Position numbers and translations under genes: made by a program
Part shown: positions 4,781-36,800 of the stretch, piece by piece
How positions within the stretch are numbered: position 1 is the first letter of the stretch
Layout of the letters: every line of letters begins with the position of its first letter
Notes under the pieces: model-generated
Seen by the model: the letters and a program-made list of their open reading frames with translations, nothing else
What the model was told of the DNA's origin: nothing
Databases searched by the model: none
NCBI GenBank assembly: GCA_047495785.1
Contig: JBLDXI010000020.1
Location: forward strand, 2,542,001 to 2,606,000
DNA from: Lepidodermella squamata
Lineage: Eukaryota; Animalia; Gastrotricha
Reading direction: 5' to 3'
DNA length: 64,000 nucleotides

Positions 4781-5447
4781 ATGAAATTCATCTTGTTCAC
4801 CGCTGTTGCGCTGTGCCTTGCATCAGCAAGCTTTGCTAAGCCTCGCCTCATCGCCCAGAAGGTCGTTCTTAACGATTTCATCGTCGAAGGAAAAGATCTA
4901 ACTGTCAAATATTACATCGTTAACATCGGTACATTGTAAGTTGAACGATTTTTACCTATTTCTGTTTACAAAATGTATTTTTTTCGTAAAAGGGCTGCCA
5001 CCAATGTCAAGTTTTCTGATGCTGCCAGCTACCCGAGCGACCGTGTCGAAGTTGTTCACGGTAAAACCGAGTTCTCATGGGACAGGATTCTGCCGTAAGT
5101 TGTCGCTATTACTCACTAGGCAATAATTAATCTTTGAACTAACCAGGAGTGGCAACGTGACGCACATCGTCATCATGAAGCCTCTGTACGCTGGCCGCCT
5201 GAACATCAGCTCTGCTGAAATTACCTACAACTCGGAAGCCGCCGAGGACACCGAAGTTCGACATGGCTACTCCAGCGAGGGCGAAATCTTCGTCATGTCG
5301 CGCCGCGACTTCGAACGCCGCATGTCCTCGCACTTGCTCGACTGGGCCGTATTCTTCGCCATCATTGCGCCAACCATTCTGATTCCGTACATTCTCTACT
5401 CCGGCTCTGCTAGCAAGTACCTGGACTCCAAGTCAAAGAAGCAGTAA
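4781..5447 (+). CDS. SSR2: Translocon-associated protein subunit beta (TRAP-beta); exons ~4781-4935, 4993-5094, 5147-5447
   Basis: Signal peptide, then LNDFIVEGKDLTVKYYIVNIG, SWDRILPSGNVTHIVIMKP, RRDFERRMSSHLLDWAVF and a C-terminal TM helix; two short GT-AG introns keep the frame. Confidence 0.92.
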
Positions 5448-5760: not shown

Positions 5761-7784
5761 TTACAGCTTAGCTGCAGAATTAGCGCGAATACCAGAACCG
5801 ATGAGTTCAACGTGGCCGCTAAGGCAAATTTCGCCGGTTTCTTCAACAACGGTCTGGAATAGCACGAGGAATTTCATGCTTTCATTTTTCGACCGTTGCC
5901 ACATTTTCGTGCGCAGAGTTTGACCCGGCAAGACTGGTTTCGAAAACCGAACCTTGACCGCCGAAAATTCCGCAGGGCTGAAGGCGTCCAGGATATGACG
6001 AACAGAAAATCCGAACGTGCATAGTCCATGCAAAATCGGGCGCGGGAATCCGCCAATCGCCGAGAAATTCGCATCGATATGCATCGGATTCTTATCACCC
6101 GACAGCCTGTACAACGCATTTTGGTCCAACGGAATTCGCTCAACTTTTTCAACATCAGGCCGCCGTGAACGCTCAGCATCGCTCAAATTCACCAACGGAA
6201 TTTGTTTATCGCTCTGTTTCGGTCCGCCGAAATTTCCGGATCCTTTCACAAAAACGACAAATTGGTTGTGCGCCAGGGTTTCACCGGTTTCAGCACTCTT
6301 CGTCACGGAATCCAGGATAATCGTAGCACCCGATCGTTTATCGACAATATCCGTAACTTTCGCCTCGGATATGACCTTGCCAGATTTCGGGAACGGCTTG
6401 AAAACCTTCAAATACTGCTCGCCGTGTAGCAAACGCGACAAATCAATTTGAATATCAGGAATTCCGTCCAATTGGAATAAAATATCCTGAGCGGGAATGA
6501 CGCCGAAAGTGGGGAACACCGTGAAACTATCGTTGCCTTCATACAAAAATTTCAAATCGTTGGGATTCGACTGAGAGCAGCCAATGCCAAGGGCGTACAA
6601 AATCGCTCGGTCGACGTTGTATTGAAAAGCGAGTTTGGGCATCTTTTTGCCAACCGCATCTCGCCACGTGCCGGTTTTCGGCGCCTCTTCACCCGATTCA
6701 CCGCTATCAACCGCCGATTTTGCGACATTGATCACGTGATTGGCCGTATCCATCGGCGACTCTGAAGCGATAAGATCGCCCCGCGCGAAATCCGCGACTT
6801 CAGCCCATCTTTCTCGCAGAGCCTCCGGTGAAGTTCGCAGGGAAGGCGGTAGGATGGTGCCCTCAGTTCGGAAATATTTAACCTTGGCAGTCCAGCCACC
6901 CCCAGTTTCGAAAATACCGCCATTTTCCTGACTTTCCTCGCTGCACAGGTGGAGGACGATCGGAACGCAGAATTCAGGTTTCATTGCCTCGACCACGTCA
7001 TTAGGTAGAACGGTTTGGGTGAGACGGGTGCCGGCATTTGGGCAAACAACATTGGTGAATACGTTATATTTTTCGCCCTCTTTAGCCAGCGATCGAGCGA
7101 ATCCGACCAAACCGGCCTTTGCTATAAAATAATCATGAATTACATTGAAATTGCGAGTTGAACTAATTTTTTACCAGCCGCATAGTTAGTTTGCCCGAAA
7201 TTGCCGTAGAGACCAGACGGTGAGCTGGTCATGATAATTCGGCCGAAATTTTGCTTCTTCATCGTTGGCCAGGCAGCGTGCGACGTTTTGTAGGCGCCAG
7301 TCACATGCACCTGCATGATTTTAGCCCAATCTTCATCGGTCATTTTGTGGAAAGATCTGTCGCGCAAGATTCCGGCATTATTGACCAAAACATCGATTCG
7401 GCCGAAATTATCGAGAGCTGTCTTGACAATGCGGTCTCCGTCTTCAACAGAATCTTTTAAAAAAATTTGATTATTTTCCTCGTAATTTTCGATTTTTTTA
7501 AAGAAAATTTACCGTAATTTGCTACAGCTTTGCCACCTTTCGATTTGATCTCAGCAACCACAGTATCGGCAGCACTTGCGCTCTTTCCATCGCCAAAGGC
7601 TGAACCACCCAAATCATTCACTATAATTGAAAAAGGTTTAAAAATAATCGGTAAAAATTTGGCGTAACTAACCCACAACAGCAGCTCCACGTTCGGCAAA
7701 TGCTAGAGCGTATGCTCTGCCTAACCCAGCACCGGCGCCGGTCACAACAACGACACGGCCGGCAAATTTAAAAGGTCCAGACAT
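5761..7784 (-). CDS. HSD17B4: Peroxisomal multifunctional enzyme type 2, copy B: SDR dehydrogenase + hydratase-2 (MaoC hot-dog), no SCP2 domain, C-terminal PTS1 AKL; 4 exons
   Basis: [34 protein letters not shown]; hydratase motif [13 protein letters not shown]...[10 protein letters not shown]; ends SAAKL*. Confidence 0.93.
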
Positions 7785-7850
7785 AATTTAACTTAAAATA
7801 AAATGCTAAAATAAATCAGACAAAAATAATCAATTTTTCAAAATAATTGT

Positions 7851-10637
7851 TCACTTTTTAGGTTTTCCAGAAGATTTCGCAACATCTATCACGTGCATGA
7901 AAGTTTCGGTAGCAGAGTCATTTGAAATAAGTTCCTGTCGCGAAAAATCGGTCAATTCAGCCCATCGGTCTCGCAATGCCTCGGGTGAAGATTTTTGGTC
8001 CGTTGGCAGTACAACGCCAGGAGTTCGGAAGTACTTGGTTTTCGCCGTCCAGCCGCCGCCAGTTTCGAAAATTCCACCGTTCTCTTTGCTATGTTCGCTG
8101 ACTAAATTGAGCACGACCGGGACGCAGAATTCAGGTTTGAGGGCTGCAACAACTTCACTCGGCATAATTGTTTCGGTCATTCGAGTTCCAGCGTTAGGAG
8201 CTACGACATTAGTGAAAACGTTGAACTTTTCGCCTTCCTTAGCCAATGTGCGCGCCAATCCAACGAGACCAAGTTTCGCTACAACGAAAATTTGTAAATT
8301 TTAAATTCCATCAAGTTTATGGAATGTCATGTGAATGTCATGAAAGTTCATTAATAAGTAGATTGAGGAATTTTTCATGTCACGTTTAGTCACTGTCGGA
8401 ATAATACGCCTGTGAGTCTCTTTGTTTTAGAGCATTGTCGCTGATTGACGGCGGTTCGTCTTTCGGTCATGTTATTTTTGCCCCGAGCCTTCCACCTCAA
8501 CCCCGCCACCCGCTAAAACCCTTTATCCGAGGGATCCTTATTTCCTGTCAGCTGTTGTATCAACTAACCCGACAATAGACGCCTCAACCTAAATTGGCCA
8601 GACAACTGGCTCTTCCATTCACCCGACAATTGGCTCTTCAACTCACCCGACAACTGGACCCTGGTCGTATTTTTCTCAAGGCTAGCAGGGCTCAACTCGG
8701 ATGGCATTGACACTGCTACAGTACAATCCTTTTAATGCACTAGCCAATTACTGATCTTGAGCCTAGTAAACATGGCTATCCGGGGTAAAGATTATCTTCG
8801 AAGACCCACTTTTCGCAGATCGTCGCTTAAGAAAATATTATTTGCCATGCTCTGTTGCTAGAAATATTGAAAAAGATGGAAACTCAGAATTCATTCACTA
8901 CCAGCCCACCATCTCGAAATCAACCTTCCAAGATGTTTTCATGATCCAATTGCAGCAGCTCCTGATCGGGAATAATCGGGAATGCTGCCGGCCTGTCTAC
9001 CTTCTTGAATGAAACGGAAGGATGAGCTCTTTAACGAAGTTATTCTCTGCATTTGATTCCGAAGAACGACGAAAAACACCCGATGTATATGAAGTTTTCC
9101 TCATCACTGTCTACTCCACATCCAGGTTAGTCTCTTTGCATTGACTTTTATGACGATTAGCTTGAACTCAGCTTTTAATATTGGCTATGGCTAATGTAAG
9201 CAGTTCATCACTCCATTTTTTTGTTTTCGGCACAACGCACTCTACATTATGTGGAATTGTGATAACGTATGCCTTCAAACTAGCGGCTGGGCTGTCTTGC
9301 CGTAGTGCTATTGAAAAGTTTGCCGACGAAGTTGCTCGATTGCACGATTCCCAAGTGGAAAACTGCACCGATAAAAAGCACAATCCCGTTGCATGGGTCA
9401 GCAAGCGGCAACCCTCCACGGCTCTTTTGCCCGTGGCTTTGTGGTGGCGTGGCTTTGTGTTACCGTCCAAATAAAAGAGATCGTTTTAACGTCGTTTCGC
9501 GTCTTTTTGAACTCCCGTCACCGCTACAAGGCCGAGGTGGAGTATAAAATTGTATTAGTGGGTCATGGTTGAATGAACGCAGGTCGCGCCCAACTATCAA
9601 TTTACCTATAGGTAAGATATCTGTCTGATTCTGCATCCTCAATTTTTCCATCATCAACAGACCATCTTTTAGCGGAACCCAATTGTAGATAAAAGCAAAA
9701 GGTTGATTTTCGAATATTTCTACGAAATTGAACCAATGTATGCATTCATAGTTAATTTTACGCTGAATTCAAAGATGATTTATTTTGAATTATGCTGATC
9801 ATTCTTGAACGATTCGAAAAGTGGTTTTAGGCCCATTGAAAATTCCAAATGTGGTTCTACCAGCAGGCAAATTTGATTCCGCTAAAATTTAGACCCGGTA
9901 CTACATAACTTGCTTTGCCAAGTGTTGACTTGTACAGCGTTATTTATATATTGAGATGAACTGAAACTTGAACTGTAACTTCACGTTATAATTGAAGACT
10001 CTAACTTAAAAATGCGATTAACTAACCAGCCGAGTAATTAGCCTGGCCAAAATTGCCGTAGAGACCGGACGGCGAGCTGGTCATCACGATGCGGCCGAAT
10101 GACTGCTTTTTCATCAAAGGCCAGGCGGCATGCGACGTTTTGTAAGATCCAGTCAAATGAATTTGAATCACCTTGGCCCAGTCGTCATCCGTCATTTTGT
10201 GAAACGAACGATCGCGCAAAATTCCAGCGTTGTTAATCAAAACATCGATTCGGCCAAAATTTTCAACGGCTGATTTTACAATGAGATCACCATTTTCAAC
10301 AGAATCTTGATTAAAAACATTGAATTTTCAGAAATTAATAATTTATTCCGAAATTAACCATAATTAGCCAGCGCTTTTCCTCCTTTGGCTTTTATTTCAG
10401 CTACAACTTTGTCGGCTGCGTTTGAGTTTTTACCATCACCAGATGCTGAAACACCCAAGTCATTCACTGAAAAATAAATTCCAGAGTTTTCCTTTCCTCA
10501 GTTCATGTATTATTGATGAGCAGACCTATTACAGAGGCACCGCGTTCTGCTAGAGCGAGCGCATAGGCTCGACCCAAACCAGCCCCGGCGCCAGTCACAA
10601 CTGCAACTCGGCCAGTAAATTTCAACAACCCAGACAT
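7851..10637 (-). CDS. HSD17B4-like copy A: SDR dehydrogenase domain only, no PTS1; 4 exons with a ~1.75 kb third intron
   Basis: [47 protein letters not shown]; same intron positions as copy B; stops at SSGKPKK* where copy B continues into the hydratase. Confidence 0.88.
8567..8660. repeat. Short degenerate tandem repeat (~23 nt unit, cacccgacaa(t/c)tggctcttc) in an intron
   Basis: About four copies of the (c/a)ccgacaa core, visible directly. Confidence 0.55.
8700..9480 (+). pseudogene. Possible decayed Mutator(MULE)-like transposase inside intron 3 of HSD17B4 copy A
   Basis: Interrupted fragments [11 protein letters not shown] and [21 protein letters not shown] resemble MULE transposase segments; many stops and frameshifts; matched by eye only. 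Confidence 0.3.
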
Positions 10638-10821
10638 AATTTACAATAAATAATAAAATTTCTGAAAGAAATCATGAGATTCATTTTTGCTACACACAAC
10701 CAAAATTTTGTTTATTGCAAAGATTCTCACATGAAATGAAAGACAAAACATAAATTTATCTGGGGGAAAACTCAGATAAGGGGCAGTATCACGATAATTT
10801 TTTGGACTTTTCAATAAATTT

Positions 10822-12460
10822 TCACAGCAACTCGCCGAAAATTCTCGGACCCTGGCCCAGTTCCCAAATCATGATACCAGTATTCATTTGCTGGGCCATT
10901 TCGATTTTATCGGCAAGTGATCGCAGAGTAGGGTAGAACAACATGTGCTGCTCCCCCTTCTCGCTATCGGTGTACGACACGTAGTTCTCATGGCCAAATG
11001 TGTCCCACTGAATCTTCGGCTTGTATTTCCGCAAAACTTCGAGAAAATCGCGGGCCAATTTTGGCTGAGGGTATTGCCCGCTCTGAAAATCGTAGCCGTA
11101 AAAGTTAAGACCTGTAAGCAATTTTTTGCGATTCGGCTCGCCATCGGCCACCAAAATTTCCAAATTAGCCCTGGCCCATGGCAACGGAGCGATTGGACCC
11201 GGTTTTCCTTGCGGTGAGAAGAAGTCGTAGGTCATCAGAGTTGCGTAATCGACAACAGGTGCTATTTCAGCGAAATCTTTTCGAGTGATGAACTGGTTTT
11301 GCCTGAGCAACAATATTTTTCATGATGTTTCCCGGAAATCAGAAAAACTCACGTCGAGAGTTCTCGAATAGCAGGTGGCAAGACCAAAATCGCCAATCGG
11401 TCTTCCTGGTTCAACGCCATTTTCAAATCGCCCATGAAATGAACTATTTCCCTGAAGATAAAGCCAAAAAACTCATATTAAACAGTCCAAATTATTGCAA
11501 AGCTTATCGAAAATAATTCCTCAACAACTCGTATTCTCAAGCTTCAAAGTAAGGAATAAATATCATAAGAAACTTCAAGCCACACTCTGGCTAAATTGTT
11601 GGCTGAACTGTGCCAAAACACCCTAAATTGTCATAAAACAAAAAAGCATCAGCGCCCTCTTCTCCCTACTCCCTTCATTTTTCATTTTAGACGCAGACCT
11701 ATATATGTTTTCCGCTCATAAGAAATCAAAATAAGATTTAGGGTTAACAAAAGCTAGGTCAATGCGCTCACTTCAGATATTCTTTTCCAGCCTGGAGCAG
11801 GACTTCAATGACCATCCCGTCAAACTTATGCTGTTGACAGGTGGATTTAATTGCTCGAATGCAGTTATGCATATATTGTTCATTGCCAAAGAAAGCATCG
11901 TAATCCGCAGTCTTCCAGTTGTCAAAAATCGCCCGAGGGACTATTTTCAGGCTCGGGTTGCGTGACTTCAGTTCATTCATCCAACCCTGATCGACATCGT
12001 GAGTTCCAGTGAAGAAACACGACTGAGCCTCGGCAGCTGCTCGAATTTGGAGCCAAACAGGCGAAATCATGTCGAATTTAACAGCAAACTCTTTCGCGAA
12101 GTCGTAGCCATAATTATTCCACTTAAATTTATATCATTAAAGCATGGGTAACTTTCTACATGATCAACTCACTGGAGTAACAAAGCCAAGCGTAGGGTTC
12201 GGAAAATTTTTCTTGGGGTTCTCCGAAGCGTAGCCATCATAATACCTCATCACATCTGGGCGGGAAACATCGGATTTGAGCAAACCCAATTCCTCGAGTG
12301 ATTTTTTCAGAATTTTAGGTCCTTTCTTGTCATCAGCAGGTTCGGATTTTTCAGGCTGAGCGTCCTCTGCTTGCTTTTTCGCCTTTTTCTCCTTCTTGTC
12401 CGAGGCTGAGAGGGTTGCAAAAGCCAAGCCAACACACAAAATCAGAATAAATAATCTCAT
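10822..12460 (-). CDS. CHID1: Chitinase domain-containing protein 1 (GH18-like, secreted), multi-exon
   Basis: Signal peptide MRLFILILCVGLAFA then TLSASD; LGFVTPWNNYGYDFAK, ISPVWLQI, HDVDQGW, FDGMVIEV (lacks full DxDxE), LMTYDF, GLNFYG, IWELGQG. Confidence 0.9.
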
Positions 12461-12566
12461 TTTCTCTCTAAGGAAATCAATTGGTTTAACAAAAAACGAA
12501 ATCAAGTAGCACAGCGGTTTTATTTTTCGGAAAATGATGAGATAGAAAGCCATTCAATTTTCGGAA

Positions 12567-13453
12567 TTAAACAAGCAGCACCGCGTTGATACAGCCGTCG
12601 TTCTCGGGGTTGTTCGTCACTTGAGCATACTTACCCCACACGACCTTACCACTCTGCGTGACGAGACCCAGCTCGGAAACATTCACTTCAATAATCGTGC
12701 CCTTAGTTATCACTCCAAGCGATGTGTAAAGCGGCGAATTCGGATTCTTTTTCACACCGATAATCGGAAGAGAAAACGTAGCTTTCAACTCAGGGTGGGT
12801 GACGTGAGCAGTTTTGAAACGAAGACCCATAGGGCGGATGAAGCGCTCGAATTTTGCCGGTTTTCGGGTGAATCCCTCACCAACATAGCAAACCTTGGTG
12901 ATCATTCTCTTCCAGGCCTTCTCTGTAAATTAATAAAATTGTGAAAAACGTTTGAATTGAATATTTTCTACGAACTTTTCCGTTTTCCAGTTCTGATGAC
13001 CTGGAAAGCCTCAGCTTCACTCACAGCACGAACTTTCGGCAGTGGAACTTCCCATTTACCGGCCTTTTCTTTACGCTTCTGCTTGATTGAATTCGATAGA
13101 ATCTTGGCTCTCGACTGCTCTTCACGATCAAGAAGATACACGGGAACAGCACCGTCTTTCGCGACATCGCCAACTCGTTGTCGCGTTTCGCGTTCCTCGT
13201 GCATTTTGATTGTCTTCTTCATCTGAATCTTTTCAGAGAAGCGGCGCTGGTTGTAAATCTTGGCCTTAATACCACGCAGCTTCTTCGCCATGGCCGCGCG
13301 ATCGTGCGGCTCACGAGCCTCCTTTTTCCTCTTCTTTTCATGGTGATCGTATCTGAAACCGTAACGCTTCTGGTGAAGCTCGATATGTTCGTTTTGCGGC
13401 TAAAATACCATAATTTACTAATTAATCTGATTGAGGCAACATGATCTTACCAT
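12567..13453 (-). CDS. NSA2: Ribosome biogenesis protein NSA2; first coding exon is the ATG alone
   Basis: ATG|GTAAGA...TTTTAG|[14 protein letters not shown]; [13 protein letters not shown]; ends [23 protein letters not shown]. Confidence 0.96.
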
Positions 13454-13561
13454 TTCGCCAGCGGGTTCGAAAACTTAACAAAACTAAACTATAACTAAAT
13501 ACCTATATTCAACACAAATTTGAAATATAAAGCTTTCTTCATAATAGAATCAGAACAAAGT

Positions 13562-14533
13562 TCAACGTTCAAGGTTTTCGAAAACGGCCAAGGTATTGCG
13601 ATGAATGGTTTCGGCGAGATCATCAGGGCTGACACCATCTGATTCGCAGCGAAGCTTGCACAGCACATCAAAAACGTCAGTGATCTTCGATGGTTCATTG
13701 CGACCGCGAACCAAGCAATCCTTCTGCCATTTCTCGGCGTGACAAAGTTTGGGCTTTACCTTCTGATCTAATAACTTATGAGAAACATGGCTAGGCCTGA
13801 TTTCGCAATAAGGAGCATCAGTTTCGAGCATGATGCGATTCAGCGGGATCTTTTTCACCACATCAAGGTTTTCGTCGGTTTTCAACGAGCAGCCGTTGAC
13901 ACCAATGTAGAGACCTAAATCGAGCAAAGCTTGACACTCAGCCCACGAACCAGTGAAAGAATGGACTACACCATTCAAGAACAAATCGCGATACTTTCTC
14001 ATTAGGTCGATGAAATCACTTTCCGCAGCTCGGCAGTGTAAGAAGAGCGGTAACGGTTTGATGCTACCGTGACCTTTGCCAAATTTAGCAACTATCTCCT
14101 TCAACTGGGTCTCGAATCCCGCAATTTGGGTAGGTTTGTCGCTGAAATGAAGACGATCGTAATCAAGACCGAATTCGCCAATGGCAGATACGTATTTTCC
14201 ATTCTCCACTATCAATTGCGATAGATCTTCAATATACTGAGCATTGACGTTCCCACCGGATGAAAATTCGCTGGTTCTAGTGGGATGGCATCCGACAGTA
14301 CATGACAGCTTCAACGGGGCTGCAGACACAGCAAATTCCTGACATAACTCAATAGCAATTTTGCTCTCATGTAAACTTCCGCCAGTAACGACAATATGTG
14401 TCATGCCGATTCCCGATGCTCGCTTGACGACATCAAGAAAATCATCAATATGCTTTTGTTTTCCATGGTACAAACCTCGAAACACTGGATCGGTCAAGTT
14501 AGCCCCAATATCAATAAACTTACGCAAAGCCAT
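13562..14533 (-). CDS. TATDN1: TatD-family deoxyribonuclease, intronless CDS
   Basis: FIDIGANLTDPVFRG, TVGCHPT, AIGEFGLDYDRL, PLFLHCR, GVVHSFTG, LETDAPYC, RNEP. Confidence 0.95.
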   Translation of the reverse strand: MALRKFIDIGANLTDPVFRGLYHGKQKHIDDFLDVVKRASGIGMTHIVVTGGSLHESKIAIELCQEFAVSAAPLKLSCTVGCHPTRTSEFSSGGNVNAQYIEDLSQLIVENGKYVSAIGEFGLDYDRLHFSDKPTQIAGFETQLKEIVAKFGKGHGSIKPLPLFLHCRAAESDFIDLMRKYRDLFLNGVVHSFTGSWAECQALLDLGLYIGVNGCSLKTDENLDVVKKIPLNRIMLETDAPYCEIRPSHVSHKLLDQKVKPKLCHAEKWQKDCLVRGRNEPSKITDVFDVLCKLRCESDGVSPDDLAETIHRNTLAVFENLER

Positions 14534-26619: not shown

Positions 26620-29600
26620 ATGAGTAAACTAGCTTATAGCGATGAAGTCGACACGGGAGGCGTAGGTTGGGGTGAAGAGGCATTTGCCGAAGATCTTATC
26701 GATGTCGACATCGCCGAAACTGTAGCACACTTACCTGAGCCTCCCGCAATCGATGAAAACCAAGCTGAGCCCGTGGTTGAAAATTCTGCGGATCATTATC
26801 AGCCTGAGCCGTCGAATGACGATGTGCAAAGCGAGCCGGTCTCTGAAGCACCGACACAGCAACATTTCGAAAATACACATTTTGTAGCTGAGCCGGAACC
26901 GGTCGTGGAAGAAGCCCCTCCACCGCTTCACACGGAGCCTGAGATCCCTATTATCCAATCAGCTCCGGAACCAGCCGCAATAGCTCCGCAGATTGAAGGT
27001 AAGTAATTATTTTGCTTTTGCTTACTTTTCGAGAAATTTTGTTGAGAAAAGCCGATTCATGGAGATCTTTCTTATTTTCAGAAGTTGCTCCCCCACCACC
27101 TCCACCTTCTCAATCAGTTTTGCAAACTTTCGTTCCTGAAATTTCGGCTGCTTTACCGGCTGAAGAAGCCCAAGGCTTCACAGCTCCACCTCCGCCAGCA
27201 GCAGCTCTTCCAACTACCATTCATCAGCAACCAGCAGCTTTCACCGCCACGACGAGAAAAACTCTGGGTCCAATGAGTGATTTGACGAAACTGCCTACAA
27301 ATGTTCTAAGAACAACGGCACTGCCAGCCGCTCCGTCTCCGACAACTGTTCAGGGCGAGCAGGCCGGCTCGAAGAAGCTGGTCCTACCCCAGGCGCAGAT
27401 CAAATTCCGCCAGCCTATTGACTACGCAGCTTTGTTGAACAAACCGACTGCAACTAGGACGAATGTATCGACAACAGGGCCTCTAGCGACTACTGTGACT
27501 TCAAAACCAGTCTCAGCCGCTAGTCTAGTGGCTAATACCCAGCAAATCACGGCAGCAGCTGCTGCTGTGGTCGCCGCGGCTCAGCAACGCCAGAAGGCGA
27601 ACCAGAATTTGATGTCGTATCCACCTCAAGCGACGAGAAACGGCCCGAGCGTTGCAGCTCCAACAGCCGCAAGACCAGTTGAACCGCCTCAATCTTTGCA
27701 ATACGCACAGCAACCACAACAGCCTCAGTTGCTAAAACCGAAGGCCGAACCTACAATTCCGAATAATATGTCCCGTTCTCAAACCCTGCCGGATTTCAAT
27801 GAGCAACCGGTGCAGCAGCAACAACAGCAACATAATACCAGTTACTACCAGCAATCGACTAATGGCGATGATTATTTGAGTGAGCAAGAAGACCCGTCTC
27901 GCTCGAGTGGCGTTACGGGTAGTGAAGAGCGGCGTGCGCACAAGAAACACCGAAAAAGCCGGCGGTCGCAACAGCCGCCACCTGTTGATTCGTACAACAT
28001 GGGTTACTACATGGAGAACCCCCAAAGCTACGCCGAATATTGCCGGCAGTGGTATGAGCAACAGGCTAGGATGTATGGGTCCTACTCAGGCGCATCAACC
28101 CCGGCCTATGAGGCGTCGGAATCCGGGTCGGAGTATGACGGCGGAAACGGGGTTCACTCCCGCCCGAGTAGCCGTATGAGTGTAGGGGGTAGTTACGTCT
28201 CGCCCCAGGTTAACAACCCTTACATGGCTTGGCAACAGACCCAGCAATACACGACGGCGGGTAACTACGACGCGGCTGCCTGGTGGTACTGGTACTACAT
28301 GCAGCAACAGCAGTTGCAACAAACACAACAACCGCAGACCCCGCAGAGACCTTCAACCCCGAAAAAATTCCGATCCCCCCACTGCCGGGCTACTTTTTCC
28401 CCATCCGGGTTCTTGGTTACCATCATACCCGGCCGGCACGCTAATGCCGTGAATGGCTCGCCGGCGACGAGGGTTAACGTTATCAGGACATATGACGTCA
28501 TCGCCCCAGCTTTACCTGAGGTTAAGGAGTACTCCGACTTCCCTGGGCCGTTAATTCCGAGCGAATCGCACAAAATCGACGTGATCAATTTCGCACAGCG
28601 CATGGCGCAGCAGGCCACGTCCAGTGACTACATCGACCGCGATTCTGTCAATCTCCTCTGGCGATTTATCGAGCTGTTAGTTCGGCAAAATGGCACGTAT
28701 TTCGGCGCGGATGTGTCGCATTTGTTGACCGAATCGCTGCCTGGCCTGCCCGAGCAGTTGATCGAACCGGCTGATCACGCGATTATCGCTCCTCAGGGCG
28801 CGATTTCGCAACTTCGTGATTTGTTGCTGCATGGTAGGAAACGCGAGGCGGTTGATTTTGCGATGAGTAAAAACTTGTGGGCTCATGCTATGTTCCTGTC
28901 GCATTCGATGAGCGAACAGTACTTTTTGACTGTCCGTAACAAGTTCTTAGCCGCATCTGCAGCGCCTGGCGACCCACTGGCGACTTTCTACCAGCTGGTC
29001 ACCCTGTCTTCACCGGTTATCAGCCGGCAAGCCGTTCTGAGCGATATGCACTCGTGGCGGCAACATCTCGCTGTGATTTTGAGTAACTCAGCCGCGAGTC
29101 CGCCCTTTCAACGGCAGTTATTGCTGTCTGTTGGTGATACGTTGCGATCGCAGGGTCGGTTATACGCTGCCCAGTTGTGCTATCTAATGGCCGGGGATCA
29201 ATTTTCGCAGTTCAGCCCATCAACCGACGGCTATTCACCCGTTAGAATGGTGCTGCTAGGCACTGAGCCGAGTGGCGATTTCCAGCGATTGGCTAAGCCG
29301 TATTTCTGTCAGTTGACTGAAATTTACGAATACTGCCTGAGACTAGCTAACCCACGATCTGTCCTGCCCGCGTTTCAGCTGTTCAAGGCGTTTTACTGCC
29401 TGAGCCTGGCTGAAATCGGGCTGGTGCACGAGGCCTTCCGCTACCTCATTTCAATAATCGAGGGCCTTCAAATCAGTTTCCACAACCAACCGAGCATGGC
29501 GAATTCGTTCCCGAGACTGTGTTTCAAATGGCTATGCGACCTGTACACGGCTCTCCACCGGTCCGAACCGGCCGTTGACTACTACGGCACGATTGAGTGG

Positions 29601-31796
29601 ATTTTTAAGGCGGCTCGTGGTGAACCGATCCAGCCGCCCCCGCTTCCACCACATATAGCGGCGGTACCCGGTCAATCGGCTCAACAGCCGCAAAATTATT
29701 TATATTCTCGGCCTGATGAGTACAGGCACTTGTCTCAGACCCCGGGGCCGTATAATAATAGCGGGCATAACATCCAGCCATATGCTGGGTACAATTCTCA
29801 GCCCCCTGCCCAGCCGGTTCAAAACCAACAGCCGGCTAGTCAACCGCACGTTCAATTTTCTCAACAACCGCCTCAACAACAAGCTCAAGCCGAACCGTTT
29901 GGCGCGTCGGGTTACGGTGTCCCATCGTTGAACCCGGGCGGCAGCAGCAGTCAGGAGGCGGCCAGGCCGTTTGCTCAATCGGGCCGTTTCGGCGAGTCGA
30001 TGAGTAGGCGGTCGGATGGCGGTGCGAGTGACCAGTCGAGTTTTGGCTTTTCGATGACTTCGATCAAAAATAACATGGCGGATGTGAAGCGCATGGCGAC
30101 TGAGTGGAACCAGCAGCAGGAATCTGCGGCGAATACCGCCAACAATAACCAACCTGCTCAACAGGCCTTGGGGTGAGTTTTCGATTGTTTTTGCGCTAAA
30201 TTTTACGAAAATTCCCAATTTTTCACCACCAGCAACTTTTACATGAAAAGGTTAGATAATGTAACAGTTAATGTCGTATCACGGGTCTTAAGTTTATGTC
30301 TCCATTATTTGAGTTTTGTAAATTTTCTGTAAGTAGAGACTTAATTCTTGTTCATTTATTATCAATTGCCAGGAAACTTCGGTATTATTTATTATTTTAC
30401 GCGTGTTTTTCTTATTTGGCCAAGTTTATTTGTTTTATTGATCGCGTTCAAGTTTATTTCCTGAGCTGATATAGGGGTGTAATTTGCAGCGTTGAAAAGT
30501 AATGGTAGTGCGTCGCATTTATTTACATTTTGGCCCACATCGAGAATTTCTGTTATAAGGTGTTTTTTACTTTTAAGTGGGCTGGATTCGTGGAGGTATG
30601 AATCGCCAATTTCGCACAATTTGAGGTAAATTTGTAGCAAACAAATAAAGAGAAAACTTACCCAGCGATTTCACTGAACTGCTTGTCGATATCATCTTTT
30701 GATTCTATTCTATAGCTCACCGATCGCTTCAAAAAATCACGGAAAATAATATGGGAAAAGTTGAACTTTGCATGACGGGTTTTTCTTGACAATAGGCACC
30801 CTTGCTCGATTTTTTTGTTACAATTTTGCTTGCAAGAAGAATAAAGATGCGGCGATTTGATGACGATTTTGAACAAATTGAAGTGAAATTGCACGCTTGA
30901 TTTCGGGAATCACGATCCTTGAAATAAAATACGTAATTTGCCATTTCAGAAACAGCCTGCAGTTGGGCCAGCAAAAGTCGAATGATTTGCCGCCACAGCC
31001 TCAGCAAGACCACCAGCAACAGCAATACCATCAGTACCAACAACAGTCGCAACCACCTGTTGAAGACCATTCTCATCAGCAGCAGCAACAACAACAGCAA
31101 CCACCACCGGCGGCTCAAGAGCAGCCTCAGGCGTATGTGTCTCCTCTGGGTGCATGGGCTCCTGCGATCCCGCCGTCTGCCCCGTCTCAGCAACAGCAAC
31201 AGTCGTCCTACGACTATAACAATACTCGGCAGCAACACGACTCTTATCAAAACAATAACCACCACGACCGGTCCTCGCCCACCCCGCCCCAGAATGACAA
31301 GTCTCCCAAAAAGAAGGGTGACGAAAGTAGCGGAACCCCATCGGGCAATTTGTTGAGCGGTCTCCTGAATCGTTTGCCATTTGGCTCTGCGAACAGTAGC
31401 AACAAACAAGCCCCGAAACGCATGGTTCTGCCCGACGATTCTAAACCGACGTTGGTGTTTGATAAGGAGAAGAACAGGTGGGTTGATAAATCGAAGCCGG
31501 AGGCTGAGCAGGAGGAGGAAGCGCCGCCGCCCCCGCCGCCGATGATGGGCGGCCCACCGGCGGCTACCTCTCAGCCTATGCCATCTATGACCGCCCCGCC
31601 GCCTACCATGTCGATTGGCGCGCGGCCCCGCGGTCGATATGTCGATGTCTTCAAACCGGCCGGGGGTGACCAGGGAGCATCTGCACCCCCTACGTCGAAT
31701 GGGCCCTCTGCGTCGGGCGCCCTGCTTCGACCGGCTATGTTCGCCCCGCCTCAGCAAACTTTCTTTGTGCCGCCGCCTGTTCAAGATGCAAGTTGA
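26620..31796 (+). CDS. SEC16: COPII scaffold Sec16; exons ~26620-26998, 27082-30172, 30950-31796
   Basis: Central conserved domain: TPKKF...H..ATFSPSGFLV, FPGPL....HKIDVINF, LLWRFIELLVRQNG, LLLHGRKREAV, LWAHAMFL, WRQHLAVILSN; C-terminal MVLPDDSKPTLVFDKEKNRWV and RGRYVDVF. Confidence 0.9.
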
Positions 31797-32855
31797 GGTG
31801 GATGAATTTCGTGCAAGAAAATAACTTAAAATAACTTAACTATGATTGATATATAACTGAATAAATTATTATGATAAAGGCATGTCTGAGTAATGGAGAA
31901 GATGAATCGCGGCTTTCTCTTTTCTCACCTCGCGTGTAACCGACTGCAATATGGCCACCTGATACACCTAAGCAAATGATTTTTCGTGTAATATTTTACT
32001 GGAATTTAAGCATAATCATTAGCGATTTAATTTTTTTGCGTTTTCCTTCAATTGAATGTCGACTTCCGTTGAAATACCCGTTAAAATCTGCTGCTGGATA
32101 TAAAAAAATGAGAGCAAAATTATTTCGAAGAAACTTATAAAACGGTGCACTTGGTTTATTGAATCGGTTGTATTTGGTGTTATTGAAAATTATAAAATGA
32201 TATTCAGTGTCCGTTATTATCATTATGTTTCTTGTAAAATAAATGACAATATTTACACGACGATTTGATCAATCCACTCTCGCACATCTTTCGTTATAGT
32301 TGTGTTCAAAACGCTGAAAAAGGATGTCTCTTATATCAAAATGTCCCCGTTTTTGTCAGCCTCTTATAGGCACATCGAACCATGTACCAATTTCCATCTT
32401 AATATCTGAATGTTTTATTTTCAAGCTGAAAAAATTTCCTCGCATTAAATTCCATTTTTTTCGGGTGGCGGTTGGTTGTTCGGTTATTTTAGGGTGGACT
32501 TGAACTGTTGGTCGGATGTATCGACCACATTTTGCCTATCTTTCCCCGTGGCTTGGTTACCTTTTTCGCAGCTTGTGGTTCTGTGTTATCATCAACTTGA
32601 AAGAAATATAAATATAATATTATTTATCTCTAAAAAATATTGTATGATTTAAGTATAATAGGTCTAAATGGACCAATGTCGACTCTTATTCTATTGTGGC
32701 TGTGGACCTCTTTACGCACGATATCGTTATTAAATGAGAAAAATATTACAATAATTTAAAATCGCGGTAAAAATGCGAAAAATGAGTAAAAAGTGCTGTT
32801 GAATACTTCAAATTAACAGTTTTTTTATTATAATTTTCTAGTGGTTACCACGCTA

Positions 32856-32900
32856 ATGAAACTAATTGGCATCTTTAACTACAATGTCAAGCGGTGCTGA
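32856..32900 (+). other. Upstream ORF ([14 protein letters not shown]) overlapping the LYRM5 start codon out of frame
   Basis: ATG at 32856 to TGA at 32898-32900, downstream of the acceptor-like ttttctAG (32840-32841); translation not shown. Confidence 0.45.
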
Positions 32901-33292
32901 ACTCAGACGCCGAGTGATTTCCTTGTACAAGCAGGTGAGAATTTATTAATTTTCAAAATTTAAAAATGGTCAATTTTTAATTTGAATTTAAATCAATTAA
33001 AACGAATTTTTCCTATTTTGTTTTGCAGCTTTCGTTTTTGGGGCGAGAGTATCCTCTGGGAGCAGACTGGTTTCATAACAAGCTGAAAAATTCCTTCACG
33101 AAGAACCGTTCCGTTTCCGACCCGGTGGAAATAAACAAATTGATCGCTCGTGGCGAGTACGTTGTCAAAGAACTCGAAGCCCTGTATAGCCTGCGTAAAT
33201 ACCGCGAATTGAAAAAACGATACTACGCCGAAGATTTGCTGACGCCGGAAGAAGTTAAACGAATCGACGTGATATCGAAAACCGAATTTTAA
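32884..33292 (+). CDS. LYRM5: LYR-motif protein 5 / ETF regulatory factor 1 (104 aa); exons 32884-32934 and 33029-33292
   Basis: [11 protein letters not shown]|[15 protein letters not shown]...[27 protein letters not shown] matches the ETFRF1 pattern. Confidence 0.92.
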
Positions 33293-33296
33293 AAAC

Positions 33297-33884
33297 ATGG
33301 AAATGATAAAACTTCGTAGTCCTATATATTTACGCCAAAATATTCGCACGATTTTCGGCGGTAGAGTAGCTTCACCCTCGATAAAAACTCACCATGAGAA
33401 GTATATAATCGGCCATACGCGTGAGCAGATGTTTGAAGTAGTTTCACGCGTCAATGAGTACAAATCGTTTCTACCCTGGTGTCACGATTCGTTGTTCGCG
33501 AGCGGAAATGCTAACAGCCGAACTGCCCAGGCTGTGCTAGACATCGGCTATCCGCCCTTTGTAGAGCGTTACACCTCGGCTGTGACCATGGAGAAGAATT
33601 CTTTAGTTCGAGCTGTTTGCGAAAATGGTAGATTGTTTAAACACCTGGAGACAAATTGGCGGTTCGGCGATGTCCGGGTGGCGAAAGACAGCGCCGCTCT
33701 GGTGCCTAAAGCTTGCACCCTCGAGTACCAGCTTCGCTTTGAAGCGTCCATGTCCATAGTTACGGCGGCGGTGAATTCGATGCTATTCGATGCTGTCGCT
33801 AAGGAAATGGTGCATGCGTTTCTGCGACGAGCCGCGCATTTGTACGGGCCGCCTTCGCGACCGCCAATCCGCCTTAAAGTCTAG
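33297..33884 (+). CDS. COQ10: Coenzyme Q-binding protein COQ10 (START-like), with mitochondrial presequence-like N-terminus
   Basis: IIGHTREQMFEVVSRVNEYKSFLPWC, LDIGYPPFVERYTSAV, LFKHLETNWRF, MVHAFLRRAAHLYG. Confidence 0.92.
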   Translation: MEMIKLRSPIYLRQNIRTIFGGRVASPSIKTHHEKYIIGHTREQMFEVVSRVNEYKSFLPWCHDSLFASGNANSRTAQAVLDIGYPPFVERYTSAVTMEKNSLVRAVCENGRLFKHLETNWRFGDVRVAKDSAALVPKACTLEYQLRFEASMSIVTAAVNSMLFDAVAKEMVHAFLRRAAHLYGPPSRPPIRLKV

Positions 33885-36800
33885 CGCCAGTCTTTTCAAT
33901 CAATTTTTTTAGCTCGTTTAGAAAAAATGTAACAAATTGAGGTTATTGGTATTTTAATGACTATTCACTTCGTAGCTAATATGATTCTCGCCGTCGCGAA
34001 ACCAGTGTCTTTTGTCTATAGAGGCAGTTGCAAGCTTCAATACCCGGATTCATTTTGTTGAGGACGAAAATGTGTATGTGGGACTTTTTCGTGATATAAA
34101 TGAAAGTAAAGATATTTTATTTAAATAAACCTTGCATTGCTCGAACTCGCGTTGTTTTTCAATATCAAACGTTAGGTGTCGGTGTCCCGACATGTGCCGA
34201 GTAACTGATCAAAAATAATTGAAGTCATCTGACGTATCAATAATATGATAACAGGCGACGTTTTCAAACAAGCTGACAGACACGTGAACCGTCACGGCAA
34301 AACTGCGTCGAAAATTGAGAACAGCGAGAGAAGGCGATGAAAAATGTGACATTTTGCAAGCTATAGTCTAGCCGCAAGGATGACCTGAATCTTGGAGAAA
34401 TATAATTCATTCGAAATTTATTGCGTTTGATGCCTCGAAGGCTTGAGTAAATTTCGAGTTCGGTTGGTATTTGTCACTCGCAAAAAACGGGTTTGCTGAC
34501 CTGCTACTTGTCAGCCGACAACGGGCGATAGCTAAAAAAAACAAGCGAGAATCCTCGCTCAACGGTTTTAACCTTGTGCAATCTCCGAAAACGCCATTTT
34601 ACTTGTCACCTGTCAAGGTGACAAGTTTACAGGTGACTCACTTTTTGATTATGAATGGTAAGATATTTCACCCAAACTTTCTTGGACACACTGGATGAAG
34701 GCAGTGACTACGTTATCTATGGATAGTAACTAGTATTTTGAGAACCTCGGAAGCTTCCACTGGATGAGACATGGGTGCGACGAGAGTGAACCCAAAATTT
34801 TGCTCTAGTACTTGATTTGTTGTTCCAGGATTCAGGACAGTCAAATGGGGCGACATTATCAGATATCTGAGATGTCCCTTGTGAAGACCCCATGGCGAAT
34901 TACCTGAAATGAACGTAAAAAGCAAGCTAATGATCTGAATTGTTTGACAAGGAATATCAAGTTGATTTAGGAAGCTTTTGAATTTCGGCGTTCAACCTCA
35001 CGTTTAAGTAATCTGAATGAATATCTGTGCCAGTTTCAGGGAGGCCCAGAGTGATATAATACCAATAGTAATACCTATAGTATATGTAATATTGGAGTCT
35101 TTTGGCCAGGCCAAGACACAAGCGATAATTAAATTTGTATCAAATTTACACGCAATTGGGTTATAGCGGGTCTCATTAATAATTTTAGCATGGCCGAGGT
35201 CGATTTTAAATTTCAACATGACGTTCTAGTCGGTGAAGAGGGTTCTGGTTCTGATGGATGGGTCAGGATCGGAAAAACCCACATTCCTCAAACAACGGAA
35301 AATTGAAGTTTTAGTTGAATCGGCGAATTCAGCCGCATAAGTCCGTCTCAAATTTATTCATAACTTATTACTACTTTCGAGAAAACTGTATCTTACAACA
35401 ATGCCAGGTTCTTTCACTTTCAACTTGATCTGGAAACTTTCCACGATATTAAATGCTGAGCTAATGACTTGGCAGGCATATACATTTCCTGGCACGTTTC
35501 CGTTTCAGCAATGTCAGCTATACCTACTTGGATTTCGCATCTGTCCTCGCGGGTTCCTTCACCGCTGTTTTTAGCCATGTTTACGCTGACCACAGCACGA
35601 ATGCACCGACTAGCCAATTTCCAAGTCAGCTCTTCACTTGATTAGCTACAAGACATCACGCGCTCTGCTTCCTTCTCAAATAACTCAATACGTGAGAAGA
35701 AAGACAACACGATGCACCAACTTGAAAGACTTCTTTCATGACGTCAACAGGCACGTCATTATTACAGGTCAACGAGACAAATAATGAACAAAAAACGCGA
35801 CAAGAAAAGAAACCAGGTTATGTAATATCTTTCATTCATTGTTTTATTCTGCCGTTTTTTAGTAAATAACCACCATATTCCACAACGAGCGTGTTCAACA
35901 TTTAGTAGCACTAATTTAACAACAACAACGTTAATCACTAGTTTTTTGTATAATTGATCTTACATGTATAACGCAGCCCGAAACATCGTACTTGAATCCT
36001 GGATTATTAGTGTATTTTTTTCATCCATCTTAAAAATCCAGTCGTCATTTCATATGTGTGTAGAAAAAACCGCGCGCTCAGGAGAAAGATTGAGAGGTGA
36101 GATTACGCTTCTCGAATTTTTCTCGGTAGTATCATAACAACCTTCTATCAAAGTTTGAAAAAAATCAGCTTCTCGAAAAATCGATAACAATAGTATACAA
36201 AAAAATCAACATCATCATCATCAAACATTAGCAGCTGGTTTTTTCAAGGACGGCACAGTATTTTTATAATCAAATTGAAATTTAATTTAATATATGATAA
36301 TAATATGTGGTTTATTGTTCTGAGGTTTGGTTTCGATTATGTCGACGGCAAACAACCTTGGCAACATATTTTTTCTCATAAATTGGACGAGTTTTCAGTT
36401 TTCATTTTTTTGCACAGATATTACGGCGATCTCGCGATATGATAAATTACAAAATGAAAAACGAAAACACAAAAAAGAAGATGAAGAGAGGAAAGCTGAA
36501 AGTGCCATTAGTGCGAATTCGTAAAAAAAGATTGAAATTTTTATTAGTTTTGTTTCTATAACATACCATGTGAGGGCTTTATAATTTGTATATCAATTAA
36601 TCAATTAATTAACGCAACGAAGCCACAACTTCAAATCAAGTCTAGCGTATAGCATATAGCGGTAATTCAACAATCAAATATTCATCGCGTGAGATTTCCA
36701 TCGTCATTTTCAATTAATATAAAAACAACTGTGTGCCACTATTATAGTCGCCTCGCTCTACTAATGATAAAATCAATCAAGTTTTTATGTACATCATATA

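What the first reader, a model, noticed from the sequence alone, without database searches (positions are those of the whole stretch)
32840..33884. LYRM5-COQ10: candidate translationally coupled bicistronic mRNA gated by an overlapping uORF
Seen: the LYRM5 stop (33290-33292) is 4 nt from the COQ10 ATG (33297), leaving no room for a poly(A) site, promoter or pyrimidine-rich acceptor. In the spliced message I find no ATG in any frame over ~316 nt between the two starts (roughly 5 expected at 1/64). Positions that are Met in human ETFRF1 (VMKE, RAMK) are V and L here. A weak-context uORF (ctaATGa, 32856-32900) starts before the LYRM5 ATG and ends just after it, out of frame, while the COQ10 ATG has optimal context (aacATGg). 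Known: ETFRF1 regulates ETF, which feeds electrons to ubiquinone; COQ10 binds ubiquinone; an LYR microprotein is encoded upstream of the main ORF in human MIEF1 mRNA. Inference: ribosomes either make LYRM5 or take the uORF, skip the LYRM5 start and reinitiate at COQ10, setting the ratio of two Q-pool proteins from one mRNA.
Basis: partly seen in the sequence, partly recalled or inferred. Interest (0 to 1): 0.85.

Follow-up and report, generated by a model that had tools for sequence, protein, structure and literature searches.

The report
Two-gene LYRM5-COQ10 messenger RNA
In this small animal two mitochondrial genes, an inhibitor of electron-transfer flavoprotein (LYRM5/ETFRF1) and the coenzyme-Q-binding protein COQ10, lie 4 bases apart on one spliced, polyadenylated mRNA whose first gene has no internal AUG, so ribosomes can scan through to the second: a known trick in a new gene pair.

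Summary
A two-exon LYRM5/ETFRF1 gene (32884-32934 + 33029-33292) stops 4 nt before a COQ10 ORF (33297-33884). The spliced message has no ATG between the two starts (319 nt). A 14-codon out-of-frame uORF (32856-32900) overlaps the LYRM5 start.

Public RNA assemblies show one spliced contig running from 32840 across the junction to 33503. They also show a poly(A) tail after 34145 and 11 non-genomic letters joined at the 32840 acceptor, which is probably a spliced leader.

A relative with about 60% COQ10 identity (metagenome contigs L001-L004) keeps four features: Sec16-LYRM5-COQ10 order, a 21-nt spacer, an ATG-free first cistron and an overlapping out-of-frame uORF. Three LYRM5 genes elsewhere have no COQ10 within 3 kb and carry internal ATGs.

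The best reading is a true bicistronic mRNA whose COQ10 start is reached by scanning ribosomes. These would be ribosomes that leak past the upstream AUGs, ribosomes that reinitiate after the uORF, or both.

The uORF "gate" is only weakly supported, because such a uORF would arise by chance in both species about 5% of the time.

AUG-free first cistrons are already known from Drosophila and green algae. Earlier notes of this scan report several similar pairs elsewhere in this genome. I class it as a new member of a known kind.

The parts
32818..32839 (+). Polypyrimidine tract plus AG: the 3' splice acceptor that defines the 5' end of the genomic part of the mRNA.
   Evidence: RNA contigs of two runs (X2, X3) both break from the genome exactly at 32840. 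X3 carries 11 non-genomic letters there, and these occur nowhere in the 64-kb window at up to 1 mismatch.
32840..32883 (+). Genomic 5' UTR (44 nt), preceded in the RNA by a leader that is not encoded in the window.
32856..32900 (+). uORF of 14 codons in weak context (C at -3), out of frame with LYRM5 and overlapping its start by 17 nt.
   Evidence: It lies inside the RNA contigs. A relative has an uORF with the same topology at L001 4584-4604.
32884..32934 (+). LYRM5/ETFRF1 exon 1 (17 codons, carries the LYK motif).
32935..33028 (+). 94-nt GT..AG intron. It contains the only genomic ATG between the two starts (32966).
   Evidence: The joint is seen in contigs of X2 and X3; ATG position.
33029..33292 (+). 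LYRM5/ETFRF1 exon 2 including the TAA stop. It has no ATG in any frame.
   Evidence: Pfam Complex1_LYR, E = 1e-10. 66% identity to Latimeria ETFRF1.
33293..33296 (+). 4-nt intercistronic spacer AAAC.
33297..33884 (+). COQ10 ORF (195 aa, START/Polyketide_cyc domain). The start is in optimal context (A at -3, G at +4).
   Evidence: Pfam PF03364, E = 2e-16. The nearest named relatives are animal COQ10 proteins.
33885..34145 (+). 3' UTR with AATAAA at 34124 and a poly(A) addition site after 34145.
   Evidence: The X2 contig has a loose end of 21 A behind 34145, and depth is zero beyond 34150. Hexamer position.

Best explanation
The locus makes one mature mRNA. A short leader that is not encoded in the window, probably a spliced leader, is joined at the acceptor at 32840. 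The 94-nt intron is removed and poly(A) is added after 34145. This mRNA carries two complete cistrons: LYRM5/ETFRF1 (104 aa) and, 4 nt later in another frame, COQ10 (195 aa).

COQ10 is translated by 40S subunits that reach its AUG by linear scanning from the 5' end. This is possible because 319 nt of mature RNA between the LYRM5 AUG and the COQ10 AUG hold no AUG. Two sub-routes feed this flow:
(a) subunits that leak past both the weak uORF AUG and the LYRM5 AUG (A at -3, U at +4);
(b) subunits that translate the short uORF, which ends 17 nt past the LYRM5 AUG, then resume scanning and reinitiate at the next AUG, which is COQ10's.

The LYRM5:COQ10 ratio is thus set at initiation on one message.

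Shown: the transcript structure, the two orthologies, the AUG-free stretch and its conservation. Inferred: the scanning mechanism, the share of each sub-route, and any physiological coupling of ETF regulation with Q binding.
For: - Transcript structure: X2 contig record 2 (574 nt, depth 240) covers 32840-32930 plus 33025-33503 with the intron removed. It has 272 nt on the LYRM5 side and 206 nt on the COQ10 side of the junction. X3, from a different study, shows the same splice and the same 5' break at 32840. There is a poly(A) loose end at 34145. No joint or loose end was reported at the junction.
- Families: Pfam places the two ORFs in Complex1_LYR and Polyketide_cyc. Homologs are named ETFRF1/LYRM5 and COQ10.
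- ATG-free interval.
- Conservation: L001-L004 (COQ10 60% and LYRM5 67% identical) has the Sec16-LYRM5-COQ10 order, a 21-nt spacer, no ATG over 351 nt between the two starts, and an out-of-frame uORF overlapping the LYRM5 ATG.
- Selection: third-codon-position identity is only 0.34-0.43, while first and second positions are 0.66-0.80 identical. Both ORFs are therefore under purifying selection, and codon choice in the two species is largely independent.
- Controls: LYRM5 genes in three other organisms have no COQ10 within 3 kb and carry 2-3 internal ATGs. 93 of 96 full-length orthologs have internal Met, and the Met-prone columns are non-Met in both species here.
- No alternative route at the junction: no acceptor-like AG or poly(A) hexamer there, and read-through of the TAA meets a stop after 8 sense codons.
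- Precedent: AUG-poor first cistrons and leaky scanning were tested in green algae (PMC11892635). Drosophila dicistronic mRNAs depend on the absence of AUGs in the first cistron (Wall et al. 2005, cited in PMC4528330).
Against: - The junction is bridged by a single assembled contig in one run. Contigs cannot prove that one molecule spans both ORFs, and they drop rare isoforms.
- The runs are only guessed to be RNA. The removed intron, the poly(A) end and zero depth beyond 34150 support that guess.
- Given the amino-acid sequence, absence of out-of-frame ATGs is not rare (0.19 here and 0.34 in the relative), so the depletion signal rests mainly on the lack of Met.
- The LYRM5 AUG has A at -3, which is not an obviously leaky context.
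- In the relative, the spacer holds AATAAA over the stop codon and 'ctttattag' 9 nt before the COQ10 ATG. That could be a poly(A)/trans-splice junction.
- Only two species could be compared.
Confidence: 0.72

Rival explanations
1. Termination-reinitiation. Ribosomes translate all of LYRM5, terminate at UAA, and the 40S subunit stays on the mRNA and restarts at the AUG 4 nt downstream. COQ10 output would then rise with LYRM5 translation.
For: The spacer is only 4 nt. Post-termination 40S subunits can move short distances and restart (discussed in PMC11892635 and PMC10275272).
Against: - The relative has a 21-nt spacer, so tight abutment is not conserved.
- ORF1 is 104 codons long, and reinitiation is efficient mainly after very short ORFs (PMC11892635 discussion).
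- AUG depletion covers the whole first cistron in two species, not only the bases near the stop. The algal work uses this pattern to argue for scanning.
- No unusual RNA structure is seen at the junction (z = +0.8).
Confidence: 0.1
2. Operon-type processing. The two genes are co-transcribed, but COQ10 is mostly translated from its own monocistronic mRNA, made by internal spliced-leader trans-splicing or an internal start. The bridging contig would then be a precursor or a merger of overlapping transcripts.
For: - The mRNA 5' end is an acceptor joined to non-genomic letters.
- Earlier scan notes describe spliced-leader genes and operon-like clusters in this genome.
- The relative's spacer has AATAAA plus a pyrimidine-rich AG just before the COQ10 ATG.
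Against: - In the window there is no AG within 43 nt upstream of the COQ10 ATG, and none with a pyrimidine tract anywhere in exon 2.
- The bridging contig is already intron-spliced. Its depth (240) is similar to that of the COQ10 body (234-319 per contig).
- No loose end or joint was reported at the junction.
- This model gives no reason for an ATG-free, Met-free LYRM5 in two species.
Confidence: 0.1
3. The uORF is the main, selected gate. Most COQ10 synthesis would come from ribosomes that take the uORF, bypass the LYRM5 AUG and reinitiate. eIF2 status could then shift the LYRM5:COQ10 ratio. This is a sub-case of the best explanation, scored separately.
For: - The uORF ATG lies inside the mature RNA.
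- Both species have an out-of-frame uORF that ends 14-17 nt past the LYRM5 AUG, and neither has any other upstream ATG.
- The AUG-free distance of more than 300 nt is ample for reacquiring initiator tRNA (general knowledge of delayed reinitiation, as in ATF4 and C/EBP).
Against: - The chance expectation for such a uORF is 0.29 and 0.17, about 0.05 jointly.
- Position, length, peptide and AUG context all differ between the species.
- MAFFT aligns the relative's uAUG to the window's LYRM5 AUG, so the uORFs may have separate origins.
- The window's uAUG is weak (C at -3), so few ribosomes would use it.
Confidence: 0.3

Closest known systems
Green-algal bicistronic nuclear mRNAs translated by leaky scanning (Gallaher et al. 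2021, PMC7896298; PNAS 2025, PMC11892635)
   Same: - The mature polyadenylated mRNA carries two unrelated ORFs a few bases apart.
- AUGs are under-represented upstream of ORF 2.
- The 5' UTR is short and the small ORF 1 is often mitochondrial.
- LYR-motif proteins are explicitly noted as common on algal bicistrons.
   Different: - This is an animal, and the mRNA 5' end is made by splicing to a leader not encoded nearby.
- The ORF 1 AUG has A at -3 rather than a clearly weak context.
- An overlapping uORF is present.
- The LYRM5-COQ10 pairing appeared in none of the papers my searches returned.
Drosophila dicistronic genes (159 pairs in FlyBase r6.04, PMC4528330; stoned and Snapin, Wall et al. 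2005 as cited there)
   Same: These are animal mature dicistronic mRNAs. Translation of the second cistron depends on the absence of AUGs in the first cistron.
   Different: - The fly ETFRF1 ortholog orsai/CG6115 is described without any dicistronic partner (PMC9585818).
- Flies do not use a general spliced leader.
- Most fly pairs do not meet the scanning criteria (PMC4528330).
Human MIEF1 mRNA, whose upstream ORF encodes an LYR-motif microprotein (PMC4383229, PMC5703645; found)
   Same: An LYR-family mitochondrial protein is encoded as the upstream cistron of an mRNA whose downstream ORF is also mitochondrial.
   Different: The LYR family member differs, as does the downstream gene (MIEF1 rather than COQ10). 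I did not check AUG content or spacing of that mRNA here.
uORF-directed start-site choice by delayed reinitiation (ATF4, C/EBP alpha/beta; from general knowledge, not checked in papers here)
   Same: A short uORF that ends beyond or near a proximal AUG sends reinitiating ribosomes to a distal AUG.
   Different: In those cases the choice is between isoforms or an inhibitory uORF of one gene. Here the choice would be between two separate proteins, and it is untested.
Spliced-leader operons of nematodes, tunicates and other animals
   Same: Genes lie on the same strand with tiny spacing in an animal that appears to trans-splice, and the upstream neighbour Sec16 is conserved.
   Different: Operon genes are separated into monocistronic mRNAs by 3' processing and trans-splicing. 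Here no acceptor exists at the junction, and a spliced contig spans it.

Membership tests
ETFRF1/LYRM5 (LYR-motif protein family) | Complex1_LYR domain above the Pfam gathering score | tested here: met
   PF05347, 41.9 bits against a cut-off of 24.8; PF13233, 35.3 bits against 22.3.
ETFRF1/LYRM5 (LYR-motif protein family) | Best homologs are ETFRF1/LYRM5 rather than other LYR subfamilies | tested here: met
   The top 120 hits are named ETFRF1 or LYRM5 where named, at 58-73% identity over the core.
ETFRF1/LYRM5 (LYR-motif protein family) | Binds ETF and removes its flavin | not testable with these tools
   This is a biochemical property of the human protein, as cited in PMC9585818.
COQ10 (START-domain coenzyme Q-binding protein) | Polyketide_cyc/START domain covering most of the protein | tested here: met
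   PF03364, 60.9 bits against a cut-off of 23.4; residues 38-175 match profile positions 1-125 of 126.
COQ10 (START-domain coenzyme Q-binding protein) | Nearest named relatives are eukaryotic COQ10 | tested here: met
   The hits are mite, priapulid, fish and nematode proteins; the mite and priapulid entries are named COQ10 homolog and the fish entry COQ10 START-domain protein, the nematode entry is unnamed, at 42-45% identity.
True bicistronic (dicistronic) mature mRNA | One processed RNA molecule spans both ORFs | tested here: inconclusive
   A spliced contig bridges the junction with 272 and 206 nt on either side. The 5' acceptor and the 3' poly(A) end are seen on separate contigs. An assembled contig is not a single molecule; long reads are needed.
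True bicistronic (dicistronic) mature mRNA | No signals for separate 3' end formation or 5' end formation between the ORFs | tested here: met
   The spacer is 4 nt, with no poly(A) hexamer at the junction and no pyrimidine-rich AG in exon 2.
Leaky-scanning / scanning-dependent bicistron | No AUG in any frame between the ORF 1 start and the ORF 2 start, conserved in relatives | tested here: met
   0 ATG in 319 nt here and 0 in 351 nt in L001. Control LYRM5 genes have 2-3.
Leaky-scanning / scanning-dependent bicistron | Weak initiation context at ORF 1 and strong context at ORF 2 | tested here: inconclusive
   ORF 2 has aacATGg, which is optimal. ORF 1 has acaATGt (A at -3, U at +4), which is intermediate. 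The species' own consensus was not derived.
Leaky-scanning / scanning-dependent bicistron | ORF 2 output falls when ORF 1 initiation is strengthened or an AUG is inserted | not testable with these tools
   Needs reporter assays or ribosome profiling.
Spliced-leader operon (downstream gene resolved by trans-splicing) | Trans-splice acceptor just upstream of the downstream gene's start | tested here: not met
   This holds for the LYRM5/COQ10 junction in the window: the nearest AG is 43 nt upstream in a purine-rich context. The relative does have 'ctttattag' 9 nt upstream.

The most novel reading that the evidence does not exclude
The overlapping uORF is a selected switch. Ribosomes that take it skip LYRM5, an inhibitor of ETF, and reinitiate at COQ10, the Q-binding protein. 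Initiation-factor status, for example eIF2 phosphorylation under nutrient stress, would then shift the ratio of two proteins acting on the same ETF-to-ubiquinone electron path from a single leader-capped mRNA. More broadly, small LYR-type mitochondrial proteins may be recurrently recruited as AUG-free first cistrons. Examples are the algal LYR bicistrons and the human MIEF1 uORF. Earlier scan notes also flag LYRM7-Maf (a first-reader note without follow-up) and FMC1-RPP30 in this genome, and I did not check them.
Probability: 0.25. Interest if true: 0.75.

Novelty: new member of a known kind. Interest (0 to 1): 0.5.

Why it matters
This is a clean case of an animal mRNA that encodes two full-size conserved proteins. 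It is supported by RNA assemblies and conserved in a second species. It occurs in a lineage that appears to trans-splice and could therefore have separated the genes, yet keeps them on one message.

The pair is functionally suggestive. ETFRF1 restrains ETF, which passes electrons via ETF-QO to ubiquinone, and COQ10 binds ubiquinone. A fixed or tunable ratio set at translation initiation would couple fatty-acid and amino-acid oxidation input to Q handling.

The case adds an animal example to the observation that LYR proteins are often first cistrons. It also gives a compact natural template (uORF, AUG-free ORF 1, 4-nt spacer) for testing leaky scanning against reinitiation in metazoa. As a mechanism it is not new.

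Tried and rejected
- Read-through fusion: rejected. COQ10 is in the +1 frame, and reading through the TAA meets a stop after 8 sense codons.
- LYR-COQ10 fusion proteins elsewhere: none among the 150 nearest COQ10 representatives (phmmer).
- Alternative splicing from exon 1 to an acceptor near COQ10: only one joint was reported. The only nearby AG after the start (33318-33319) would be out of frame.
- Wider conservation: exhaustive and word-based protein searches found only one close COQ10 relative. Two metagenome scans with COQ10 and LYRM5 patterns were blank.
- Exact-protein look-ups of the window's own COQ10 and LYRM5 found nothing.
- Contexts of three other LYRM5 genes showed no COQ10.
- P0003: its Logan contigs (L010, L011) look vertebrate and possibly human-like. 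I ran one tblastn for an upstream LYR ORF, found none, and then dropped them without further saving, comparison or search.
- The 11-nt leader fragment: not found in the window. It was too short for the findings search, so I could not match it to the spliced-leader gene that earlier notes describe.
- RNA structure: the 5' region and the junction are unremarkable (z = -1.4 and +0.8).
- Literature: no paper was found that holds both 'dicistronic' and 'Coq10', and none of the three papers that name both ETFRF1 and COQ10 appears from its title or abstract to deal with shared transcription.
Full report
**1. What is in the sequence**

- An LYR-motif gene has two exons, 32884-32934 and 33029-33292, separated by a 94-nt GT..AG intron. 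It encodes 104 aa.
- Its TAA stop (33290-33292) is followed by AAAC and then the ATG (33297) of a 195-aa ORF that ends at 33884.
- In the spliced message the only ATGs from 32840 to 33297 are at 32856 (uORF), 32884 (LYRM5) and 33297 (COQ10). That leaves 319 nt of mature RNA with no ATG in any frame.
- The single genomic ATG in between (32966) lies in the intron.
- The uORF (32856-32900, 14 codons, C at -3) is out of frame and ends 17 nt into LYRM5.
- COQ10's ATG has A at -3 and G at +4. LYRM5's ATG has A at -3 and T at +4.

**2. Identity of the two proteins**

- Pfam places ORF 1 in Complex1_LYR (E = 1e-10) and ORF 2 in Polyketide_cyc/START (E = 2e-16).
- The 120 best homologs of ORF 1 are ETFRF1/LYRM5 wherever they are named, at 58-73% identity over the core.
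- The nearest named relatives of ORF 2 are animal proteins from mite, priapulid, fish and nematode. Three of these four entries are named COQ10.
- Both assignments are secure.
- ETFRF1 is reported to inhibit ETF by promoting flavin loss. The fly ortholog orsai is described without a dicistronic partner (PMC9585818).

**3. RNA evidence**

- In run X2, a 574-nt contig (depth 240) covers 32840-32930 plus 33025-33503. The intron is removed, and the contig crosses the stop/start junction with 272 nt and 206 nt on either side.
- Run X3, from a different study, shows the same splice.
- Both runs break from the genome exactly at 32840, directly after a pyrimidine tract and AG. X3 continues with 11 non-genomic letters (ATTTGTGTCTA). 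These occur nowhere in the 64-kb window, on either strand, at up to one mismatch.
- An X2 contig ends behind 34145 with 21 A residues, 16 nt after the end of an AATAAA hexamer (34124-34129). Depth is zero beyond 34150.
- No other joint or loose end was reported.

The major RNA is therefore [leader]-32840..32934/33029..34145-poly(A), about 1.2 kb, and it contains the uORF and both cistrons.

Caveats:
- The runs are only guessed to be RNA. The splice, the poly(A) end and the sharp 3' edge argue that they are.
- A contig is not a single molecule.
- Contigs drop rare isoforms.

Earlier notes of this scan say the genome is probably a gastrotrich with a 30-nt spliced leader. I could not compare my 11 letters with that leader, so "spliced leader" remains an inference.

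**4. Conservation**

- The only close COQ10 relative in 1.8 billion representatives is P0001, at 60% identity.
- P0001 sits on four metagenome contigs from one species, L001-L004, which differ by one SNP.
- There the gene order is Sec16, then LYRM5, then COQ10, as in the window, where Sec16 lies at 27327-31796.
- In L001, LYRM5 starts at 4591 and has the intron in the same place. It stops at 4979, and COQ10 starts 21 nt later at 5001.
- The 351 nt between those two starts hold no ATG.
- An out-of-frame ATG at 4584 opens a 6-codon uORF that ends 14 nt past the start of the LYRM5 ATG.
- Third-codon positions are only 34-43% identical, while first and second positions are 66-80% identical. Both ORFs are therefore under purifying selection, and the ATG-free state is maintained rather than merely inherited.

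**5. Is the ATG depletion more than chance?**

- In the window, 0.6-1% of ATGs are followed by 316 or more ATG-free bases.
- Neighbouring coding sequence has one ATG per 42-68 nt.
- Only 3 of 96 full-length ETFRF1 orthologs, and 9 of 120 aligned cores, lack an internal Met.
- Four Met-prone alignment columns are non-Met in both species. One of them is Met in 65% of orthologs and Leu here.
- Conditional on the amino-acid sequence, the chance of having no out-of-frame ATG is 0.19 for the window and 0.34 for L001. The signal is mostly at the protein level.
- A rough joint figure is a few per thousand.
- As natural controls, LYRM5 genes of three other organisms (L005/6, L007, L008/9) have no COQ10 within 3 kb and carry 2-3 internal ATGs.

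**6. Mechanism**

- A read-through fusion is excluded, because the frames differ and a stop follows after 8 sense codons.
- In the window there is no acceptor-like AG and no poly(A) hexamer at the junction.
- An AATAAA at 33130, inside exon 2, is simply read through by the contig.
- The pattern matches scanning-dependent bicistrons. In green algae, AUGs are under-represented upstream of ORF 2. Inserting an AUG, or strengthening the ORF 1 context, lowers ORF 2 output (PMC11892635).
- In Drosophila, which has 159 dicistronic pairs, translation of the second cistron of stoned and Snapin depends on the absence of AUGs in the first cistron (PMC4528330, citing Wall et al. 2005).
- I therefore favour scanning from the 5' end as the way COQ10's AUG is reached (confidence about 0.7).
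- Termination-reinitiation is less likely. ORF 1 is long, the relative's spacer is 21 nt, and the depletion spans the whole cistron.
- Operon-type resolution is less likely for the window. It cannot be excluded as a minor route, especially in the relative, whose spacer contains AATAAA and 'ctttattag'.

**7. The uORF gate**

- The uORF is in the mature RNA, and an uORF with the same topology exists in the relative.
- In random leaders of these lengths such a uORF arises in 29% and 17% of cases, about 5% jointly.
- The two uORFs differ in distance from the LYRM5 start (28 vs 7 nt), length, peptide and context (C vs A at -3).
- MAFFT aligns the relative's uAUG with the window's LYRM5 AUG. The relative's 'ATGTGTAATGT' may be a small duplication.
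- I rate a selected gating role at about 0.25-0.3.
- Even if it is not selected, ribosomes that use the uORF would be expected to contribute to COQ10 initiation by reinitiation.

**8. Comparison and novelty**

- The kind of system is known: a mature bicistronic mRNA with an AUG-free first cistron.
- LYR proteins are noted as frequent members of algal bicistrons (PMC7896298). A human LYR microprotein is encoded upstream on the MIEF1 mRNA (papers found).
- Earlier notes of this scan describe several similar pairs elsewhere in this same genome: PET100-archease, POP7-THUMPD2, BRK1-METAP1D, FMC1-RPP30 and LYRM7-Maf. These are unchecked by me, but they suggest that this is a genome-wide habit rather than a one-off.
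- The LYRM5-COQ10 pairing itself appeared in none of the papers my searches returned.
- I class it as a new member of a known kind, of moderate interest.

**9. Handling note**

The Logan contigs L010 and L011, fetched for a distant COQ10 (P0003), looked vertebrate and possibly human-like. After one check for an upstream LYR ORF, which found none, I did not use them further.

Noticed in passing
window 27327-32839: Sec16 lies upstream on the same strand, and this order is shared with the relative L001. A 954-nt RNA contig of run X2 (depth 53) covers about 31831-32782 and ends 58 nt before the 32840 acceptor. The bicistron could therefore be the downstream unit of a leader-resolved operon with Sec16.
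   Followed up: partly
window 32840 (RNA 5' junction): Eleven non-genomic letters (ATTTGTGTCTA) precede 32840 in an X3 contig, and 4 unaligned letters precede it in X2. The 11 letters are absent from the whole window. They are probably the 3' end of the spliced leader that earlier notes describe, but I did not match them to it.
   Followed up: partly
window 33130-33135: An AATAAA hexamer inside LYRM5 exon 2 (codons E-I-N-K) is not used as a poly(A) signal in the assembled RNA. The contig runs straight through it.
   Followed up: yes
window 33236-33289; L001 4917-4976: Both LYRM5 proteins carry an 18-24 aa C-terminal tail beyond the 'RYY..E(D/E)' end of most orthologs, with a shared 'LTPE' motif. 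It may be a by-product of, or a spacer for, the bicistronic layout.
   Followed up: no
L001 4975-5000: The relative's 21-nt spacer has AATAAA overlapping the LYRM5 stop and 'ctttattag' 9 nt before the COQ10 ATG. This could be a combined poly(A)/trans-splice site that the window species lacks.
   Followed up: partly
window 33479-33552: Run X2 holds two equally deep variants of this COQ10 stretch (4 differences; depths 234 and 166). This suggests two alleles or strains in that sample.
   Followed up: no
window 5761-14533 (minus strand): Another first-reader note on this window flags a five-gene same-strand cluster as a possible trans-spliced operon. I did not examine it.
   Followed up: no
L010, L011: These Logan contigs carry a distant COQ10 (P0003) and look vertebrate, possibly human-like. 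No LYR ORF lies upstream. I dropped them without further use.
   Followed up: no
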